Source: Blastocladiella emersonii ATCC 22665
Taxonomy: Eukaryota > Fungi > Blastocladiomycota
Assembly: GCA_025594325.1 (NCBI GenBank)
Contig: JANHCV010000001.1
Span: 5,078,961-5,142,960 of the forward strand
Length of the DNA: 64,000 nt
Direction of reading: 5' to 3'
In this document: positions 43,298 through 50,235 of the stretch, one piece after another
How the letters are laid out: the number at the start of each line of letters is the position of its first letter
How positions within the stretch are numbered: the stretch's first letter is position 1
Made by a program: the position numbers and the translations under genes
Notes under the pieces: generated by a model
Databases searched by the model: none
The model's input: only the letters and a program-made list of their open reading frames with translations
Told to the model about the DNA's origin: nothing

Positions 43298-43653
43298 ATG
43301 GTATTGTTCATAGATCGCGTTCTTAGTGATGCTTCGGCCATGAGGACTCGCCCTGCCCCGCTCACAGCGATGTCCGTGCGTGGACCGAGGGACTCGAGGA
43401 TCGGCAGCTTGGCTGAGCCACCTGGTGGTGGGTCGGTCGGTCCGGTGCCGCTGAGCCACAGGAGTACGGATCAGGGTACCTCATCAGCGAGTCCATCACG
43501 GCGCGACGCGACTGACGCGAGGCCGCGTCGCGCACATGGGCCACCCGCCGACTTGACTTGCCCGTTTCGGCAGTCGGTCCTCGCTCGCGCCACCACACAG
43601 ATGGTCGACCCCGAAGAACGACTCCATCGCGCTTGGATGACAACGTCACCGCC

Positions 43654-46600
43654 ATGGAACTAGATGCAACGCTCAGGCCGTACCAGGCGGACCTCGTCCA
43701 GCGCGCGCTGCGCGACGGCAACTATATCGTGTGCCTGCCGACCGGTACAGCTAATGGCCCTCGGTCCTCGACGCGATGCACCGCCTAACGCTCGCCGCCG
43801 TCAACGTGCAGGCATGGGCAAGACGCACATCGCGTTCGAGATCTTCTACCAGCTGCGCGCGAAGCGGGAGCGGCACGGCGTGACGGTGCTCTTCGCGTGC
43901 ACCGAGGCGCTGTGCAAGCAGCTCCTCGGCGAGTTCCGCTCGCTCGCCGACGAGCGCGGCCTCGCGCTCCGCCCACTTATCCTCGCCGGGCAACGCAAGG
44001 GCAGCAACGCCGACTTCGCCAAGCTGGACCTGCTCGTCACGACGCCCGGCAAGTTTCTCGCGATGCTGGGCAAGGATGGGTTCCTCGAGATCGGCGATCT
44101 TGCGCTCGCCATCTTCGACGAGGTGCACAACGGGATCAAGGACCACCCGTACGTCGCCATCGCCGGCCTCCTGCGCGACCACAACGAGGCCGCGCGCGCG
44201 GCCGCGGGCGCCGGGTCCGGCTTACACCCCGTCAAGCTGCTCGGGCTTACCGGCACGCCCGTCAAGTTGCAGCAGAGCACCTCGGTCCATCCGGGAATCG
44301 TCAAGATGATGCTCGGCAACCTGTTCAAGACGTTCGACAACGCCCAGCTGCTCATGGTCGACCCCAACGCCGATGCCGGCGGCCAGGACGCCGGCGTGGT
44401 CGAGAGCTACGAGGAGTTCCAGCCCAAGATCCGCACCGAGTCAGTCACGTTCCTGCCGACGTTCGACGACCCGGACCAGCTCGAGATCACGCAGGTCGTG
44501 TGGGCGCCCGTCCACGCCGCGCTGCGCCGCATCCACACGGCGCACCCGGCGCTGCTCGAGGACCCGGTCCGCATCTACACGCGCACGCCCAGCCGCCGCG
44601 ACGACGTCTTCTTCCCGCGCACCTTCTCCGCGGCGCACCTCGCCGACTTTGGCACGCTCGGCGTGTACCAGATCCAGAGCACGATCGAAAGCGTTGCTGC
44701 CAACTTCCGCAAGCCGCTGTCGCGGCGCAGCAAGCAGGCGTTGGCGTGCGACATGTTCGACGCGCTGACGACGGAGCAGCAGGAGCAGATCGCGCGGGAC
44801 CTCGTGGACGCGTCGTGGCACGCGTATGCCGCGGTGCTGCAGCAGTGGGTCGGCGGGCTCGCGGTCGTCGACTGCGTCAAGCACAACCGCGACTTTTTCG
44901 GCCGCTCGAACCCGGCGCTGCTGCCCGCGGTCGAGAAGCTCGTCAACGACGCGACGCGTCTCTCGCCGCGCATGCGCAAGATCATCGAGCTGCTCGACGC
45001 CGAACTCGCTGGCGCCCACGGCACCGACTGTGGTATCGTGTTCATCAACAACGTCGAGGAGGCGTTCTGGGTGTCGTACTGCATCCACGCGCACTCGCCG
45101 TACACGTCGGGCGTCCTGATCAGCGGCAATCGCTCGACGGGCAAGGTCACGGCCACCCTCCCGCCCGACGTCGCGGCTCGACTCTGCAACGGCAAGGCGC
45201 TCAGCAAGTTCGAGAAGGGCGAGCTCCGCGTCCTCGTGTGCACCTCGGTCGCCGAGGAGGGGATCGACGTGCAGGCGTGCCGCGTCGTCATCAACATGAC
45301 GACGGCGGCCATCAACCCGAACCGCCTCATCCAGGCCCGCGGACGCGCGCGCAAGGAGGGCGGCGTCATGTACATGCTGTGCGCGTCGGACCGCGACCAC
45401 GCGCGCGTGGTCAAGGCGTCGCGCAGCAGCGAGATCGCGGCGCGGTCGACCGCCGAGTCCGCGAGCACGGGCGCGTCGGTCGATCTCGATGCGGGCTGGC
45501 GCGACGACAGGCGGCACGGGTCGGCACCGACGCCCACGCCTCGCACGCCGGCGGATTCGTCGCGGCACACGGCCAGCGCGTCGCCAACTTCGAGCTGGTG
45601 GGAGCCCATGCCCATGACACCGCCGACCTCGCCGTCGCCGCCGTCCCTCGTGATGCGTCGAACGGCATCGCCGATGCGCTCCAACTCGGTCTCGGACCTC
45701 ACGGCGTTCATCGGGTCGCAGCTCGTGTCCTCGATCCGCGACCTGGAGCTCAGCCTGCCGTACAGCCGCGGCGGGTCGTCGTCGCCAAGTCCATCCTCCT
45801 CGCCTACTCCCTCGCGCGCCTCGTCCACACTCCCGTTGGCGAGCACGCCGATCGTTCCGACATCTCGCACCAGCGAGGTTACGGCGTGGTCGACCACCGA
45901 GCCGGCGAGCACGGACACGCCAGCCGACGTCGACGCCGCGGGCCTGCGCGATGGCGTGCGGGACGGGTCCATGTTACTTTCGTCGCCGGCTTCCGTTTCG
46001 CCGCCTGCGGTGCGGCGTGCGGCGTCGCCGGCGCGTACCGACTCGGCCTCGGTAACCTCGCTGCCCGTCGACAAGCGTGACGCCTCGCCGACCCGCTTCG
46101 CGCCTCGGTTGCCGCACGGCCACGACGATGACGCGCGTTCGGACTCCGCGTCGCCTTCCTCCTCTGCGCCAACAACCGCACCGCCATCCCTTACTCGCAC
46201 CCCGACTCTCACTTCTGCGCCTGTCGTCGCGCCCGTCTCTACGACCAACGACGCGCCGCTCATGCTTCCCGTGCGGAATCCTCCGCCTTCGTCGTTTGCG
46301 CCTCGTCACGATCTGCCCGCAGCGAATCCACGCGTCGCGCGGGCGCTCAGCGACCACGACATCTCGCCGCTCCTACCGCTCCCCACCGCCGCCTCGCCGC
46401 GCATCCCGGACTCGGTCGCGGCTACCCATGCTGCGGCGGTCACGGCTGTGTTCACAACTGTCGCGCCTGTCGCTCTGGCTTTAAGCGAACGCGACCTTCC
46501 TCCACCCCCACCGCTCCCCGCGACCACAACACCACCGCCTTCGTCGTTTGCGCTTCCTCGTGATCTCTCCGCAGCTACCGTACGCGTCGCGCGGGCGCTC

Positions 46601-47170
46601 AGCGAGCACAATCTCCCGCCACCTCCCTCGCTCCCCGTCGCCGAAGCGCCGCCGCCTTCGCCGTTTCCGCTTCCTCGTGATCCCCCCGCAGCCACCGCAC
46701 TCGTCGCGGAGGCGCTAATTGACCACGACCTCCCGCCACCCCCACCGCTCCCTGCTGCCGCCGCACCGCCGCGCGTCCCGGTCTCGGTCGCGGTCGCGGT
46801 CCCGGTCTCGGTCGCGGTCCCGGCTACCACGCTGCCGCTGAAGATCCCGCGCACAATTGCGGACGCCAAGGGCCGCGTCATGAACCTGCTCACCACGCAC
46901 GGCGGCCTCGCCGGCACGTCCGAGCTGTCGCGCTGGTTCGTGGAGCGGCCGCTCGGCGACGCGGACGGGAGGCCGCCGCTGTTCCACTGCCAGGTGCGCG
47001 TCACGTTCCCGCCGCAGTTGCTCAAGCTGCTCGCGTCGGTCGCGGGCGACCGGACGCGGATCGACAGCAAGGCGGACTGGGTCGCGGGCAAGAAGGCGGC
47101 GGCGCAGGCGGCGTGGAATGACGTTTGGAAGCAGTTGGCCGAGATGGGTGCTGTGGTCATAGATGGATAG
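43654..47170 (+). CDS. Dicer/RIG-I-like DExD/H helicase with C-terminal dsRBD/DUF283-like domain, paralog 1, about 1149 aa (intron 43745-43811)
   Basis: LRPYQ, LPTG|MGKT, DEVH, GLTGTP, GIVFINN, TSVAEEGIDVQAC, IQARGRAR; S/P-rich linker; C-terminal FHCQVRVTFP...KKAAAQAAW...QLAEMG. Confidence 0.85.
46280..46753 (+). repeat. Imperfect intragenic repeat (three ~35-aa units plus one partial) in the helicase 1 linker
   Basis: PPPSSFAPRHDLPAANPRVARALSDHDISPLLPLP / PPPSSFALPRDLSAATVRVARALSEHNLPPPPSLP / PPPSPFPLPRDPPAATALVAEALIDHDLPPPPPLP. Confidence 0.85.
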
Positions 47171-47200
47171 TTGAGAGTGTATGTACAAGAGAGTATTGTG

Positions 47201-47270
47201 TTTGTACAGGGTGTCTGCCGACGCGAAGGCGATCAGACGCGCTGATCAAACGTCTGATCAGCGACGCGTC
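47201..47270 (+). promoter_or_regulatory. Conserved non-coding block after helicase 1 (TGATCA-N6-TGATCA)
   Basis: Aligns with 50167-50235 after helicase 2; first TGATCA lies 73 and 72 bp after the respective stop codons. Confidence 0.45.
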
Positions 47271-47508
47271 GTTCATGATCAAAACAGGTTGAACTAGCCG
47301 GGCTTGCGAGATACGAGTCCGCTTGACGGATCAAAGAATCCATCACAACCCGACGCAGATTAGCGAGACGCGTTGCGCCCACGAGTGACAAAGCTGTCCA
47401 TGACCCGTCCAGCGCCACAAGCTGCTCAGCTGTCAGCCCGCAAAGCTTCTCACGCTCTCTTGCTCGCAAAAGTTATGGGCAGGACCCTCGAGCTACGAAG
47501 TCTACACC

Positions 47509-50134
47509 ATGGAACTCTCTGCAAAACTCAGGCCGTACCAGGCGGTCCTCGCCGAGCGCGCGCTGCGCGATGGCAACTACGTCGTGAGTCTGCCGACTGG
47601 TACCCCTGCTCCCGACGCAGATCTGAGAGAGAGCAGATCCTGACGTGGTTCGCTTGTGGCTAGGCATGGGCAAGACGCATATTGCGTTCGAGGTCTTCTA
47701 CCAGCTCCGCATGAAGCGTGCGCGCGAGGGCAAGCGGCCTAGCGTGACGGTCCTGTTCGCGTGCACGGCGCCGCTGTGCTCGCAGCTGTTCAACGAGTTC
47801 CGGTCGCTCGCCGACGACCGTGGCCTACCGCTTCGCGGGCTCGTGCTCACTGGGCCCGGCAAGGGCGGCAACGCAGACTTCACCAAGCTCGACCTGCTCG
47901 TCACGACGCCCGGCAAGTTCCTGGTCATGCTCGGCAAGGACGGGTTCCTCACGATCGGCGATCTTGCGCTCGCCATCTTCGACGAGGTGCACAACGGGAT
48001 CAAGGGCGACAACTACGTCGCCGTCGCCAACCAGCTGCGCCGGCACAACGAGGCCGCGCGCGCGGTCCAGCAGTTTGGCTCGGGCGCGTGCGCCATCAAG
48101 ATCCTCGGATTAAGCGGCACGCCCGTCAAGCTGCAGCAGAGTACCTCGGTCGACCCGGAAACCGTCAAGACGATGCTCGGCGGCCTGCTCGAGACGTTCG
48201 ACGACGCGCAGCTCGTCATGATCGACCCGAAAGCAGACCACGACGTGGGCGTGCTCGACAGCTACAACGACATGGAGCCCAAGATCCGCACCGAGTCCGT
48301 CTCGTACCTGCCGACGCTTGACGACCCGGACCAGCACAGCATCACGCAGGCTCTGTGGGCGCCGGTCCACGCCGCGCTGCGCCGCATCCACACGGACCAC
48401 CCGGGCCTGTTCGAGGACCTGATCCGCATGTACACGCGCACTACCGATCCGCGCGAGGAGGTCTACTTTCCGCGCACCTTCCACCCGAGTCTTCTCGCCG
48501 TGTTCGACACGCTCGGCGTGTACCAGATCCAGCGCCGCATGGAGAACCTCGCGTCCGACCTGCTGCAGAAGTCGTGGCAGTTCCCCCTGTTCTGCATCCT
48601 GTCCCCGGAGCAGCAGCAGCAGGTCGCCACGGACCTCAGCCTCGCGGCGCGGTACGCGTACGCGGTGATCTTGCAGCAGTGGATCGGCGGGATCGCGGTG
48701 CGTCACTACGTCGATTACAACGACGAGATCTTCGCGCAACCGTGGGCGTGCGCACCGCCGCGCGACTCGAGCAGTACACCGGCCTCGGAGATCATGGAGG
48801 CCGTCGTCGCGGACCCCGAGGCGACAGACATGGCCCCGCGGATGCGCAAGGTCATTGAGCTGCTCGACGCCGAGCTCGAGGGCACAGGCGACGACGAGGA
48901 CGAGTACGCCATGGTCTTTGTCAACAACGTCGACGAGGCGTTCTGGGTGTGCTACTACCTCACGACGCAGTCGCCGCACACGTCGGGCGTGCTCATTGGC
49001 CGCAACAACTCGCTCGGCCAGGCCATGGACAACTTCCCGCCCGACGTCATCAAGCGCAGCCAGTACAAGACGGCGCACCAGATGTTCGGCAAGGGCAGCC
49101 TGTACGTGCTCGTGTGCACGTCCGTCGCCGAGGAGGGGATCGACGTGCAGGCGTGCCGCGTCGTCATCAACATGACGACGGCGGCCATCAACCCGACGCG
49201 CTTCATCCAGTCGCGCGGCCGCGCGCGCAAGGAGGGCGGCATCATGTACATGCTGTGCGCGTCGGACCGCGAGCACGCGCGCATCGAGAAGGCGTCGCTC
49301 AGCAGCGAGATTGCGGCACGGTCCACGACCGAGTCGGCGAGCAGTGGCGGCGGCGCACTCGCTGTTCTCGAGGATCCCTTCTACAGCACCGTGACCTCGC
49401 ACACGACCGCTTCTTTGGCTCGGCCCACTTCCTCGCTTTCATCGTCGTCGCTTGGCATGGTGCGCTCGACGTCGCCGAACCGCGCCAACTCGGCCTCGGA
49501 GCTCACGGCTTTGGTACACGACGTCAGTCTCGGCCTGCCGCGCGGCCGTGACGACGCGGAGTCGCCGTCGTCGTCATTCACGTCATCCTCGCCGCCCCCT
49601 TCGATCTCTGCTCCCATCGCTGCCACCCGCATGCAGCCCGTCACCGAGCCTCCTTCCTCGTCATTTTCACTTCCACGATCGCCTCCACCGGCCGCGTCGA
49701 CGCGTTCTCCATCACCCTTTGACGACGACGATCTGCCGCCACCCCCGCCGCTGCCAAGCGCGCCTGCTGCGGCCGAACCCGGACCTCGTCGCTCGACGCT
49801 GCCGCTCAAGATCCCTTCGTCCATTCTCGACAACAAGGGCCGCATCATGCACCTGCTCGCGACCTACGGCGGCGTCACAAATCCGTCCGAGCTCTCGTGC
49901 TGGTATGTGGAGCGGCCAACAGCTGCACCGACTGCGATACCGCCGCTGTTTCACTGTCACGTCCGCGTCGTGTTCCCGCCGCTGCTCGCGGACGTGCTTG
50001 CACCGGTCGCGGGGAACATCCTGAAGCTTGACAGCGCGGCCGGGTGGGTTGCGAGCAAGGACGAGGCGGCGCAGGACGCGTGGGCCGACGTGTGGAAAAA
50101 GCTGAGTGATATGGGCGCTGTATTAGTGAATTAA
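47509..50134 (+). CDS. Dicer/RIG-I-like DExD/H helicase with C-terminal dsRBD/DUF283-like domain, paralog 2, about 853 aa (intron 47600-47663)
   Basis: Same motifs and same intron position (inside Walker A Gly) as paralog 1; FIQSRGRAR; C-terminal FHCHVRVVFP...SKDEAAQDAW...KLSDMG. Confidence 0.85.
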
Positions 50135-50166: not shown

Positions 50167-50235
50167 TTTGTACATGCAGTCTCGAATCAGTGAAGGCAAG
50201 CGCGTTGATCAGAGATGTGATCAGTGACGCGACGC
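50167..50235 (+). promoter_or_regulatory. Conserved non-coding block after helicase 2 (TGATCA-N6-TGATCA)
   Basis: TGATCA at 50206-50211 and 50218-50223, flanked by TTTGTACA, GAAGGC, CGCG and GACGCG as in the copy at 47201-47270. Confidence 0.45.

What the first reader, a model, noticed from the sequence alone, without database searches (positions are those of the whole stretch)
43654..50134. Tandem Dicer/RIG-I-like helicases with a terminal dsRBD-like domain and no RNase III: candidate fungal dsRNA sensors
Seen: two genes with intact SF2 motifs of the Dicer/RLR type (LPTGMGKT, DEVH, TSVAEEGIDVQAC, QxRGRAR) and a helical insert between motifs III and IV; then a disordered S/P linker and a ~100-aa domain ending in KKAAAQAAW...LAEMG, like dsRBD/DUF283. 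Both stop there, with no room for PAZ or RNase III (339 bp to the next ATG; 227 bp to a convergent gene). Established: fungi are generally considered to have Dicers but not RLRs; nematode DRH proteins are RNase-less Dicer-related helicases acting in antiviral RNAi. Inference: 'half-Dicer' helicases acting as virus or TE dsRNA sensors, or partnering a separate RNase III.
Basis: partly seen in the sequence, partly recalled or inferred. Interest (0 to 1): 0.82.

Follow-up and report, generated by a model that had tools for sequence, protein, structure and literature searches.

The report
Nuclease-less Dicer-type helicase gene pair
The water fungus Blastocladiella emersonii carries two neighbouring genes for helicases of the type found in Dicer and in animal virus sensors, but with no RNA-cutting part and only a small, probably double-stranded-RNA-binding tail; such stand-alone helicases seem not to have been described in fungi, and their function is untested.

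Summary
Two same-strand paralogous genes (43654-47170, 1149 aa; 47509-50134, 853 aa) each have one short intron inside motif I. Each encodes an SF2 helicase with intact motifs I, II and VI, a helical insert and a pincer helix, then a disordered Ser/Pro linker and a roughly 115-aa C-terminal domain.

No RNase III, PAZ, DUF283, RIG-I C-terminal domain or Pfam dsRBD is found in any frame of the 64-kb window. The genome is Blastocladiella emersonii ATCC 22665. GenBank fuses both genes into one 1881-aa model, which I think is an artefact.

Sequence profiles, signature residues, a predicted structure (Z 25 to MDA5, RIG-I and LGP2) and a tree place the helicase on the Dicer/RLR side of the split from archaeal Hef-type helicases. 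It lies outside the sampled RLR clade and the Dicer clade. Its exact position is unresolved.

The only close relatives are a tandem pair in Allomyces arbusculus. More distant kin include many uncharacterised protist helicase-dsRBD proteins and Dictyostelium HelF.

The dsRBD reading of the tail rests on motifs, position and an alignment-guided model. Profile tests failed.

A role in dsRNA handling or silencing is inferred. Transcription could not be tested.

Verdict: new variant of a known kind.

The parts
43654..43744 (+). Gene 1, exon 1: MELDATLRPYQADLVQRALRDGNYIVCLPT plus the first base of the Gly codon.
   Evidence: Sequence read, spliced. It matches the N-terminus of the GenBank protein P0001.
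43745..43811 (+). Gene 1 intron: 67 nt, GT..AG, phase 1, inside motif I.
   Evidence: The intron sequence is not conserved with that of gene 2, while the flanking exons are.
43812..45464 (+). Gene 1, helicase part of exon 2: Hel1, helical insert, Hel2 and pincer.
   Evidence: Pfam DEAD, ResIII and Helicase_C. Profile against PDB: Dicer 2e-47, RLRs about 1e-32. The boundary is approximate.
45465..46825 (+). Gene 1 disordered Ser/Pro/Ala linker of about 450 aa. It includes a 117-nt Pro-rich repeat (46482-46772, 2.5 copies) and a (CGCGGT)n tract (46770-46823).
   Evidence: It does not align with gene 2. Repeats by TRF.
46826..47170 (+). Gene 1 C-terminal domain (TTLPLKIP...GKKAAAQAAWNDVWKQLAEMGAVVIDG) and stop codon. 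Probably a divergent dsRBD fold.
   Evidence: 58% identical to gene 2. It aligns with the C-terminal dsRBDs of protist helicases in the whole-protein MAFFT alignment. No Pfam hit.
47509..47599 (+). Gene 2, exon 1: MELSAKLRPYQAVLAERALRDGNYVVSLPT plus the first base of the Gly codon.
   Evidence: The exon is conserved with gene 1 while the upstream DNA and the intron are not, so it is a coding exon of a separate gene.
47600..47663 (+). Gene 2 intron: 64 nt, GT..AG, phase 1, at the same position as in gene 1.
47664..49351 (+). Gene 2 helicase: Hel1; helical Hel2i-like insert at about 48143-48880; Hel2; pincer helix.
   Evidence: AF2 pLDDT 80-96. VIA-align Z 25.6 to MDA5, 25.4 to RIG-I and 25.3 to LGP2, with about 480 of 573 residues aligned. 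Foldseek PDB E 1e-19.
49352..49792 (+). Gene 2 disordered Ser/Pro linker of about 147 aa.
   Evidence: pLDDT under 50 for residues 563-721 of the model.
49793..50134 (+). Gene 2 C-terminal domain (STLPLKIP...SKDEAAQDAWADVWKKLSDMGAVLVN) and stop codon.
   Evidence: Model residues 760-822 have pLDDT 77-87 and read beta, alpha (lineage-specific insert), beta, long alpha. Several Dicer models align with the query as far as residue 817, through their post-helicase DUF283 region.
47238..47272 (+). Conserved 3'-flank block (GCGCTGATCA-N6-TGATCAGCGACGCG) about 70-100 nt after the stop of gene 1. A counterpart lies at about 50200-50233 after gene 2.
   Evidence: Alignment of the two 3' flanks. Its function is unknown.

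Best explanation
These are two separate, tandemly duplicated genes of Blastocladiella emersonii. Each encodes a stand-alone helicase of the Dicer/RIG-I-like class of duplex-RNA-activated ATPases: Hel1, a helical Hel2i-like insert, Hel2 and a pincer helix. The ATP-binding and ATP-hydrolysis motifs are intact.

A 150-450-aa disordered Ser/Pro linker tethers the helicase to a small C-terminal alpha/beta domain. That domain is most likely a fast-evolving dsRBD fold. There is no RNase III, PAZ, CARD or RLR zinc domain.

The family is so far seen only in Blastocladiomycota (Blastocladiella and Allomyces), and it duplicated in tandem in each genus.

Inferred mechanism: the tethered dsRBD-like module captures duplex RNA. 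The helicase clamps and translocates on it using ATP, as in Dicer-2 (helicase plus DUF283) or the RLRs (helicase plus CTD). It would hand the RNA to, or withhold it from, separately encoded silencing factors such as RNase III-dsRBD proteins and Argonautes. This would make it a cofactor or regulator of RNA silencing or virus and transposon surveillance, like nematode DRH-1/3 or Dictyostelium HelF, rather than a signalling receptor.

Shown here: gene structure, domain content, family placement and conservation. Inferred: dsRNA binding, ATPase activity and pathway.
For: Gene models and the conserved intron. Exon 1 of gene 2 is conserved while its intron and upstream DNA are not.

Helicase class:
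- A PDB profile search ranks Dicer (2e-47), DCL1, DCL4, DRH-1, MDA5 and LGP2 (1e-35 to 1e-31) above RIG-I (3e-29) and FANCM (4e-24).
- The signature residues K-x-HPY after DExH, the Cys in motif V and GRAR in motif VI match Dicer/RLR and not the Hef type.
- In the careful ML tree the Dicer/RLR/blastoclad side is split from the Hef type at 100/99.
- The AF2 model has pLDDT 80-96 in the helicase. VIA Z is 25 to MDA5, RIG-I and LGP2, with about 480 residues aligned including the insert and pincer, and Foldseek gives E 1e-19.

No nuclease or other Dicer/RLR modules are found in the whole window.

Orthologous architecture is found in Allomyces: a tandem pair, with KKPAK in the tail of the first copy.

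For the tail as a dsRBD:
- The whole-protein alignment puts it on the dsRBDs of related protist helicases.
- dsrm families dominate the language-model neighbours.
- The model's beta-beta-alpha part has pLDDT about 80 and aligns with Dicer's DUF283 region.

Both ORFs are intact, with dN/dS of 0.4-0.85.

Precedent for the function: HelF (PMC4894637, PMC2175303), and the ring formed by helicase plus DUF283 in Dicer-2 (PMC10328071).
Against: - No transcript evidence: no RNA run was listed.
- The dsRBD assignment fails every statistical sequence test. Pfam gives no hit at E up to 10, hhalign gives probability 8% and a family-specific HMM scores negative.
- AF2 with orthologues only gave pLDDT 40. 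The better model used an alignment that already contained dsRBDs, so it is partly circular.
- Gene 2 has KDEAAQ in place of the canonical KKxAK.
- Motifs Ia, III (TGT/SGT in place of TAS) and IV are divergent in B. emersonii, so RNA translocation may be altered.
- Fold searches score Fml1/Mph1 and FANCM almost as high as the RLRs.
- The position inside the Dicer/RLR group is unresolved. It is nested with protist helicase-dsRBD proteins in one tree and sister to all of them in another. The AU test rejects none of the alternatives.
Confidence: 0.6

Rival explanations
1. There is one gene, not two. As in GenBank KAI9190500.1, a 511-nt intron would join ...LAEMG of the first unit to MGKT of the second. 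The product would be a 1881-aa protein with two helicase-linker-tail units in tandem.
For: The public model exists. A GT follows AEMG, and the acceptor is the one used by the intron of gene 2. Double-helicase proteins of this family exist, for example P0010.
Against: The fusion would discard the conserved exon 1 of unit 2, which carries the LRPYQ motif and the LPTG half of the P-loop. That exon is about 85% identical in DNA to the exon 1 of gene 1, while the surrounding intron and upstream DNA have diverged. Each unit has its own ATG in the same CCATGGAAC context and its own conserved 3'-flank block. The proposed 511-nt intron is eight times longer than the two confirmed-looking ones. The same model also removes part of the Pro-rich repeat as an intron. 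The Allomyces units are annotated separately.
Confidence: 0.1
2. They are divergent FANCM/Mph1/Fml1-type DNA translocases that work in replication-fork or crossover control, and the tail is an unrelated protein-interaction module.
For: Foldseek against AlphaFold Swiss-Prot ranks Fml1 and Mph1 at E 2e-20 to 1e-19, level with Dicer and RIG-I. VIA-align gives FANCM Z 22.8 against 25.6 for MDA5. Hef scores 1.5e-30 in the profile search.
Against: The Mph1 alignments have rmsd 26-38 and run through disordered tails. FANCM is the weakest of the family in the sequence profile, at 88 bits against 115-165. The motif signatures G-x-YAY, P-x-VD and GR(G/T)GR of the Hef type are absent, and the Dicer/RLR ones are present. 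The Hef type is split off at 100/99. There is no Pfam hit to the Hef/FANCM helical insert PF21210, to ERCC4 or to the MHF-binding domain. Caveat: no verified eukaryotic FANCM/Mph1 sequence was in the tree.
Confidence: 0.06
3. They are remnants of a true Dicer, 'half-Dicers' derived by loss of the PAZ-RNase III half in the blastoclad lineage. The tail would be the old DUF283, displaced by linker expansion.
For: The best hits outside the family are the Dicers of zoosporic fungi: Polychytrium, Rhizophlyctis, Chytridiales sp. and Chytriomyces. The top PDB profile hit is a Dicer helicase. Motif VI, IQSRGRARK, equals that of DCL1. The tail follows the helicase as DUF283 does, and it aligns with the DUF283 region in Dicer models. 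The AU test does not reject blastoclad plus Dicer.
Against: The Dicer clade excludes them at 98/95. A Dicer_dimer HMM does not detect the tail. Allomyces keeps full Dicers as well (PMC12663654), so this would be duplication followed by truncation rather than simple loss.
Confidence: 0.2

Closest known systems
Dictyostelium discoideum HelF (DDB_G0294407, 837 aa), a nuclear suppressor of RNAi
   Same: It is a stand-alone Dicer-related helicase with one dsRBD and no RNase III, in an organism whose RNase III proteins are encoded separately (PMC4894637, PMC2175303). A Dictyostelium protein of this architecture, P0176, was found among the relatives.
   Different: HelF carries its dsRBD at the N-terminus (residues 2-76), not on a long linker at the C-terminus. 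In the tree it forms its own clade with P0177 and is not sister to the blastoclad pair. The function of the blastoclad proteins is untested.
Nematode Dicer-related helicases DRH-1 and DRH-3, and vertebrate RLRs (RIG-I, MDA5, LGP2)
   Same: Same helicase fold with insert and pincer: VIA Z 23-25.6, about 480 residues aligned. The sequence profile gives about 1e-32. They also lack a nuclease.
   Different: There is no zinc-binding C-terminal regulatory domain: no PF11648 hit, and a single Cys in the tail. There is no CARD or other N-terminal extension, since the ATG lies 356 bp after the previous gene. The RLR clade (100/100) excludes them.
Dicer helicase plus DUF283 module (fungal, plant and animal Dicers; AncD1D2, Dicer-2)
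   Same: Highest sequence-profile scores. It shares the K-x-HPY, Cys motif V and GRAR signatures. A small dsRBD-fold domain follows the helicase. In Dicer-2 the two together encircle dsRNA (PMC10328071).
   Different: There are no PAZ, platform or RNase III domains in the window. The tail is separated by 150-450 disordered residues and is not recognised by the Dicer_dimer HMM. The proteins lie outside the Dicer clade (98/95).
Uncharacterised protist helicase-dsRBD proteins (560-750 aa): Symbiodinium 'dcl2, partial', the foraminifer Bolivina, and MMETSP and ocean-metagenome sequences. Some carry a Z-alpha domain.
   Same: The order of parts is identical: a Dicer/RLR-type helicase, then a C-terminal dsRBD, with no nuclease. 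One subgroup was sister to the blastoclad clade in the first tree (97 SH-aLRT). Their dsRBDs align with the blastoclad tail in the whole-protein alignment.
   Different: Their dsRBDs pass Pfam, while the blastoclad tail does not. Their linkers are short. The sister relation was not recovered with other sampling. None has been studied experimentally as far as I could find.

Membership tests
Dicer/RIG-I-like (duplex-RNA-activated ATPase) SF2 helicases | Intact SF2 motifs I (GxGKT), II (DExH) and VI (QxxGRxR) | tested here: met
   GMGKT, DEVH and Q(A/S)RGRARK are present in both genes. Motifs Ia, III and IV are divergent in B. emersonii.
Dicer/RIG-I-like (duplex-RNA-activated ATPase) SF2 helicases | Helical insertion domain (Hel2i) between Hel1 and Hel2, and pincer helices after Hel2 | tested here: met
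   The AF2 model has helices 221-356 and a helix at 534-560. About 480 of 573 residues superpose on MDA5, RIG-I and LGP2 at 3.5-3.7 A, Z 25. Pfam RIG-I_C (PF18119) is not hit. This rests on a predicted structure only.
Dicer/RIG-I-like (duplex-RNA-activated ATPase) SF2 helicases | Subfamily signature residues and tree position relative to Hef/FANCM | tested here: met
   K-x-HPY, the Cys in motif V and GRAR are shared with the Dicer, RLR and protist groups and not with the Hef type. The split from the Hef type has 100/99 support.
Dicer | Two tandem RNase III domains | tested here: not met
   No Pfam hit. No RNase III HMM hit or signature in six frames of the 64-kb window.
Dicer | PAZ/platform and DUF283 (Dicer_dimer) | tested here: not met
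   No hits. The tail may have the same fold as DUF283, but this is not shown.
RIG-I-like receptors, including DRH-1/3 | C-terminal zinc-binding regulatory domain (PF11648) | tested here: not met
   No Pfam or HMM hit. The tail has one Cys where four zinc ligands are needed.
RIG-I-like receptors, including DRH-1/3 | Membership of the RLR clade | tested here: not met
   The RLR clade (12 sequences, including LGP2 and a Caenorhabditis DRH) has 100/100 support and excludes the blastoclad clade. The AU test under LG+F+G4 does not reject a sister relation.
FANCM/Mph1/Hef | Hef-type motif signatures, Hef/FANCM helical insert (PF21210), ERCC4 or MHF-binding regions | tested here: not met
   Verified Hef sequences (NCBIfam equivalog scores above cut-off) form the other side of a 100/99 split.
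dsRBD (PF00035) fold for the C-terminal domain | Significant profile match | tested here: not met
   Pfam gives nothing at E up to 10, apart from a stray sub-threshold DUF3693 match in gene 2 (19.5 bits against a cut-off of 21). hhalign against helicase-associated dsRBDs gives probability 8%. A family HMM gives negative scores.
dsRBD (PF00035) fold for the C-terminal domain | alpha-beta-beta-beta-alpha topology with the KKxAK motif at the start of helix 2 | tested here: inconclusive
   The model shows alpha1 at pLDDT about 50, a weak beta1, then beta2, an extra helix, beta3 and a long alpha2 at pLDDT 77-87, but the alignment used contained dsRBDs. Allomyces has KKPAK, gene 1 has KKAAAQ and gene 2 has KDEAAQ.

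The most novel reading that the evidence does not exclude
Blastocladiella runs a 'Dicer in pieces'. It would have no canonical Dicer, and small-RNA production or antiviral surveillance would be shared between these stand-alone helicase-dsRBD proteins and a separately encoded RNase III-dsRBD protein. Unchecked notes of this scan report an RNase III-like gene with two dsRBDs and slicer Argonautes elsewhere in the genome, and no other note mentions a Dicer. Alternatively, the clade could be a surviving early branch of stand-alone duplex-RNA helicases that predates the Dicer/RLR split, as its basal but weakly supported position would suggest.
Probability: 0.12. Interest if true: 0.8.

Novelty: new variant of a known kind. 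Interest (0 to 1): 0.55.

Why it matters
Stand-alone helicases of the Dicer/RLR class are known as animal virus sensors (RLRs), nematode RNAi cofactors (DRH-1/3) and one amoebozoan RNAi suppressor (HelF). In fungi, surveys define Dicers by their RNase III domains (PMC12663654), so proteins like these go unseen, and my literature searches found no description of them.

This work gives three things:
- Corrected gene models for a lineage-specific fungal family.
- Evidence that the family belongs to the Dicer/RLR side and not to archaeal Hef-type helicases, with FANCM the weakest profile match.
- A link to a large, unstudied set of helicase-dsRBD proteins, some with Z-alpha domains, in protists and at least one chytrid.

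If these proteins bind dsRNA, nuclease-free duplex-RNA helicases would be an old and widespread eukaryotic theme rather than an animal invention. That bears on how Dicer and the RLRs arose. The claim is testable with simple biochemistry.

Tried and rejected
1. A word-indexed protein search with the whole of gene 2 found nothing. Restricted to the helicase it found only weak Dicer hits. The exhaustive HMMER scan was needed.
2. AF2 of the tail alone with three orthologues gave pLDDT 40 and was unusable.
3. hhalign of the tail against helicase-associated dsRBDs and an HMM of the nearest protist dsRBDs were not significant. phmmer of the tail against PDB gave only chance lectin hits.
4. RNA evidence: no RNA run was listed. 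Only DNA runs of the source sample were found.
5. The treekit AU test with the mixture model did not finish. It was replaced by IQ-TREE constrained searches under LG+F+G4, which rejected none of the placements. My 'blastoclad plus Hef' constraint is the same bipartition as 'blastoclad sister to the rest', so it does not test nesting inside Hef.
6. I looked for a B. emersonii Dicer among the hits by composition and by record look-ups. The GC-rich candidates P0045 and P0121 come from ocean and other metagenomes, and ten further Dicer hits are from other fungi and plants. This leaves the question open.
7. Pseudogene reading: rejected. Both ORFs are intact (1149 and 853 codons), dN/dS is below 1 and the family is conserved in Allomyces.

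Full report
**What is there**

The window is GC-rich, about 66%. An exact protein look-up shows it belongs to Blastocladiella emersonii ATCC 22665.

ORF listing and direct reading of the DNA give two same-strand genes:
- Gene 1 is 43654-43744 plus 43812-47170 and encodes 1149 aa.
- Gene 2 is 47509-47599 plus 47664-50134 and encodes 853 aa.

Each has one short GT..AG intron (67 and 64 nt). Both introns are phase 1 and lie inside the Gly codon of the P-loop LPTG|MGKT.

The proteins are 58% identical over the helicase and 58% over the last 113 residues. The linkers between these parts do not align. Gene 1's linker is about 300 residues longer and holds a 117-nt Pro-rich repeat.

**One gene or two**

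GenBank annotates the locus as one 1881-aa protein, KAI9190500.1. That model joins ...LAEMG to MGKT through a 511-nt intron. It would throw away exon 1 of gene 2.

That exon is about 85% identical to exon 1 of gene 1 at the DNA level, while the adjacent intron and upstream DNA have diverged. It supplies the LRPYQ motif and half of the P-loop.

Each unit also has the same CCATGGAAC start context and its own conserved TGATCA-N6-TGATCA block after the stop. I therefore read two genes, at about 0.9. No RNA run was listed to test this.

**Domain content**

Pfam finds only DEAD, ResIII and Helicase_C. Nothing above threshold is found in the tails.

I built HMMs for RNase III, PAZ, Dicer_dimer, dsrm and the RIG-I C-terminal domain from the retrieved homologues. 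None hits any of the six reading frames across the whole 64 kb. There is therefore no hidden nuclease exon within 43 kb upstream or 14 kb downstream.

**Which helicase**

A single-sequence search of PDB gives Dicers first, then the RLRs and Hef.

A profile of the four blastoclad helicases gives:
- ancestral animal Dicer helicase, 2e-47
- DCL1, 4e-35
- DCL4, DRH-1, MDA5 and LGP2, 1e-32 to 7e-31
- Hef, 1.5e-30
- RIG-I, 3e-29
- human Dicer, 1e-28
- FANCM, 4e-24

An exhaustive HMMER scan of 1.84 billion representatives found only one hit below 1e-30, which is the GenBank fusion itself. The next two are Allomyces arbusculus proteins, at 6e-23 and 5e-16. Everything else is at 1e-13 or weaker. The family is thus very divergent.

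The best outside hits are Dicers of chytrids.

**Tree**

The references were labelled by domain. The Hef references were verified by NCBIfam equivalog scores.

A careful ML tree of 72 sequences and 511 columns under LG+C20 PMSF splits the Hef-type helicases from everything else at 100/99. It recovers the RLR clade (100/100), the Dicer clade (98/95) and the blastoclad clade (100/99). The position of the blastoclad clade among these is left open, at 67/93.

With other sampling a quick tree nested the blastoclad clade in a group of protist helicase-dsRBD proteins, at 97 SH-aLRT. AU tests under LG+F+G4 reject none of blastoclad plus protist group, plus Dicer or plus RLR.

Column consensus per group shows three discriminating signatures:
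- K-x-HPY after DExH
- Cys in motif V
- GRAR in motif VI

The blastoclad proteins share all three with Dicer, the RLRs and the protist groups. The Hef type has G-x-YAY, VD and GRGR at those positions.

B. emersonii deviates at motifs Ia, III (TGT/SGT) and IV. Allomyces is closer to the consensus.

**Structure**

AF2 of gene 2 with an 80-sequence natural alignment gave pLDDT 80-96 over residues 1-562. The model shows a helical insert (helices 221-356) and a long pincer helix (534-560). The linker (563-721) is disordered. The tail has pLDDT 77-87 for residues 760-822.

Foldseek against PDB ranks RIG-I, MDA5, DRH-1 and LGP2 at 1e-19 to 1e-17, then Dicer-2, with Hef at rank 44.

VIA-align gives Z 25.6 to MDA5, 25.4 to RIG-I, 25.3 to LGP2, 23.3 to DRH-1, 22.8 to FANCM and 21.4 to Dicer-2. 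About 480 of 573 residues are aligned, so the insert and pincer superpose too.

Against AlphaFold Swiss-Prot models, Fml1 and Mph1 score as well as Dicer and RIG-I, though with rmsd 26-38 through disordered tails. Fold alone therefore does not separate FANCM-type from RLR/Dicer-type helicases. The sequence signatures, the profile scores and the tree against archaeal Hef do.

**The tail**

The following favour a dsRBD fold:
- It is the last domain, as in about 30 of the top 150 representative clusters. Those are 560-750-aa proteins with a helicase and a Pfam dsRBD and no nuclease.
- A whole-protein MAFFT alignment places those dsRBDs on the tail. PPLFHC.VRV lies on strand 2 (GPxHxxxF.atV). GKKAAAQAAW lies on the KKxAEQxAA start of helix 2. 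A blastoclad-specific 13-residue insert lies between strands 2 and 3.
- The tail of the first Allomyces copy has the canonical KKPAK.
- dsrm-type families dominate the language-model neighbours, at score 0.83, which is only a lead.
- Several Dicer models, and the ancestral Dicer helicase-DUF283 structure, align with the query out to residue 817-818.

The following count against it:
- Pfam, hhalign (8%) and a dedicated HMM are all non-significant.
- AF2 with orthologues only failed.
- The confident model used an alignment that contained dsRBDs.

I put the dsRBD fold at about 0.6-0.65. The tail is not an RLR C-terminal domain, because it has one Cys and no zinc site.

**Relatives**

In Allomyces arbusculus the two homologues are also adjacent on one strand. 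Each genus's pair is monophyletic, at 100 and 99-100. The duplications were therefore independent, or the copies have been homogenised.

The second Allomyces model (KAJ3360930.1) misses a 69-nt intron. Spliced, it reads QIK|GRARAQGGRCYFLCES, so its motif VI is intact. A dsRBD-like tail is not evident downstream of it.

Allomyces macrogynus also has full-length Dicers (PMC12663654, supplement). In Allomyces at least, the family therefore coexists with Dicer.

Whether B. emersonii has a canonical Dicer is open. None turned up among the hits I could trace. Unchecked notes of this scan mention an RNase III-like gene with two dsRBDs and slicer Argonautes elsewhere in the genome, and no Dicer.

Named more distant kin are:
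- Symbiodinium 'dcl2, partial'
- a Dictyostelium discoideum helicase-dsRBD protein
- a 642-aa helicase of the chytrid Physocladia, auto-named after MDA5

Dictyostelium HelF has an N-terminal dsRBD and a Dicer-related helicase. Its loss enhances RNAi (PMC4894637, PMC2175303). It is the closest characterised precedent.

**Selection**

Nei-Gojobori estimates between the paralogs give dN/dS as follows:
- about 0.4-0.5 for exon 1, Hel1 and the tail
- 0.66 for Hel2
- 0.85 for the insert

The genes are under constraint but evolve fast, the insert most of all. Strong GC3 bias and possible gene conversion make these numbers rough.

**Mechanism and verdict**

Most likely these are ATP-dependent duplex-RNA-binding helicases, with a tethered and probably dsRBD-like module that helps capture RNA. 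They would act with separately encoded silencing proteins as cofactors or regulators. This is an inference from family membership and from the behaviour of the Dicer-2 helicase with DUF283, of the RLRs, of DRH-1/3 and of HelF (PMC10328071 and the papers above). Nothing here shows RNA binding, ATPase activity or expression.

The word 'sensor' is not warranted, because there is no signalling module.

The finding is real. It corrects a public gene model and adds a fungal lineage, plus a pointer to a large protist set, to the nuclease-free Dicer/RLR-type helicases. I rate it a new variant of a known kind, of moderate interest.

Noticed in passing
window 43654-50134: GenBank protein KAI9190500.1 (H9P43_001934, 1881 aa) fuses the two helicase genes through a 511-nt intron. 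It also removes part of gene 1's Pro-rich repeat as an intron. This is probably an annotation artefact.
   Followed up: yes
window about 47238-47272 and about 50200-50233: A conserved, partly palindromic block (GCGC-TGATCA-N6-TGATCA-GCGACGCG) lies 70-100 nt after the stop codon of each helicase gene, in 3' flanks that are otherwise diverged. It may be a 3'-end or regulatory element. A separate first-reader note also records it.
   Followed up: partly
window about 43490-43515 and about 47340-47365: A short conserved block (TCCATCAC..CCGACGC) lies about 150-170 nt upstream of both start codons, within upstream DNA that is otherwise unalignable. It is a candidate shared promoter element.
   Followed up: no
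window 46482-46823: Gene 1's linker holds 2.5 copies of a 117-nt Pro-rich repeat, followed by (CGCGGT)n encoding Ala-Val/Pro-Val repeats. Gene 2 has neither.
   Followed up: partly
L001 9557-9625 (Allomyces arbusculus JADHYV010000181.1): The model KAJ3360930.1 stops early because a 69-nt GT..AG intron inside motif VI was missed. Spliced, the helicase continues as GRARAQGGRCYFLCES for about 109 more codons.
   Followed up: yes
L001 10526-13507, minus strand: Directly downstream of the Allomyces helicase pair lies an intronless 993-aa ORF rich in Lys, Asn and Ile, with a Herpes_ori_bp (PF02399) helicase hit. Its composition is unlike the GC-rich host genes, so it may be of viral or mobile-element origin.
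   Followed up: no
proteins P0008 and P0037 (metagenome and Logan contigs): Some protist relatives combine a Z-alpha domain with the Dicer/RLR-type helicase. P0008 has Z-alpha, helicase and dsRBD. In P0037 the C-terminus reads like a Z-alpha domain where its relatives have a dsRBD, by eye only. They are candidate Z-form or dsRNA-sensing helicases outside animals.
   Followed up: no
protein P0180 (Physocladia obscura, Chytridiomycota): This 642-aa nuclease-free helicase, auto-named 'Interferon-induced helicase C domain-containing protein 1', groups with a second clade of protist helicase-dsRBD proteins. Zoosporic fungi thus hold at least two lineages of such helicases.
   Followed up: partly
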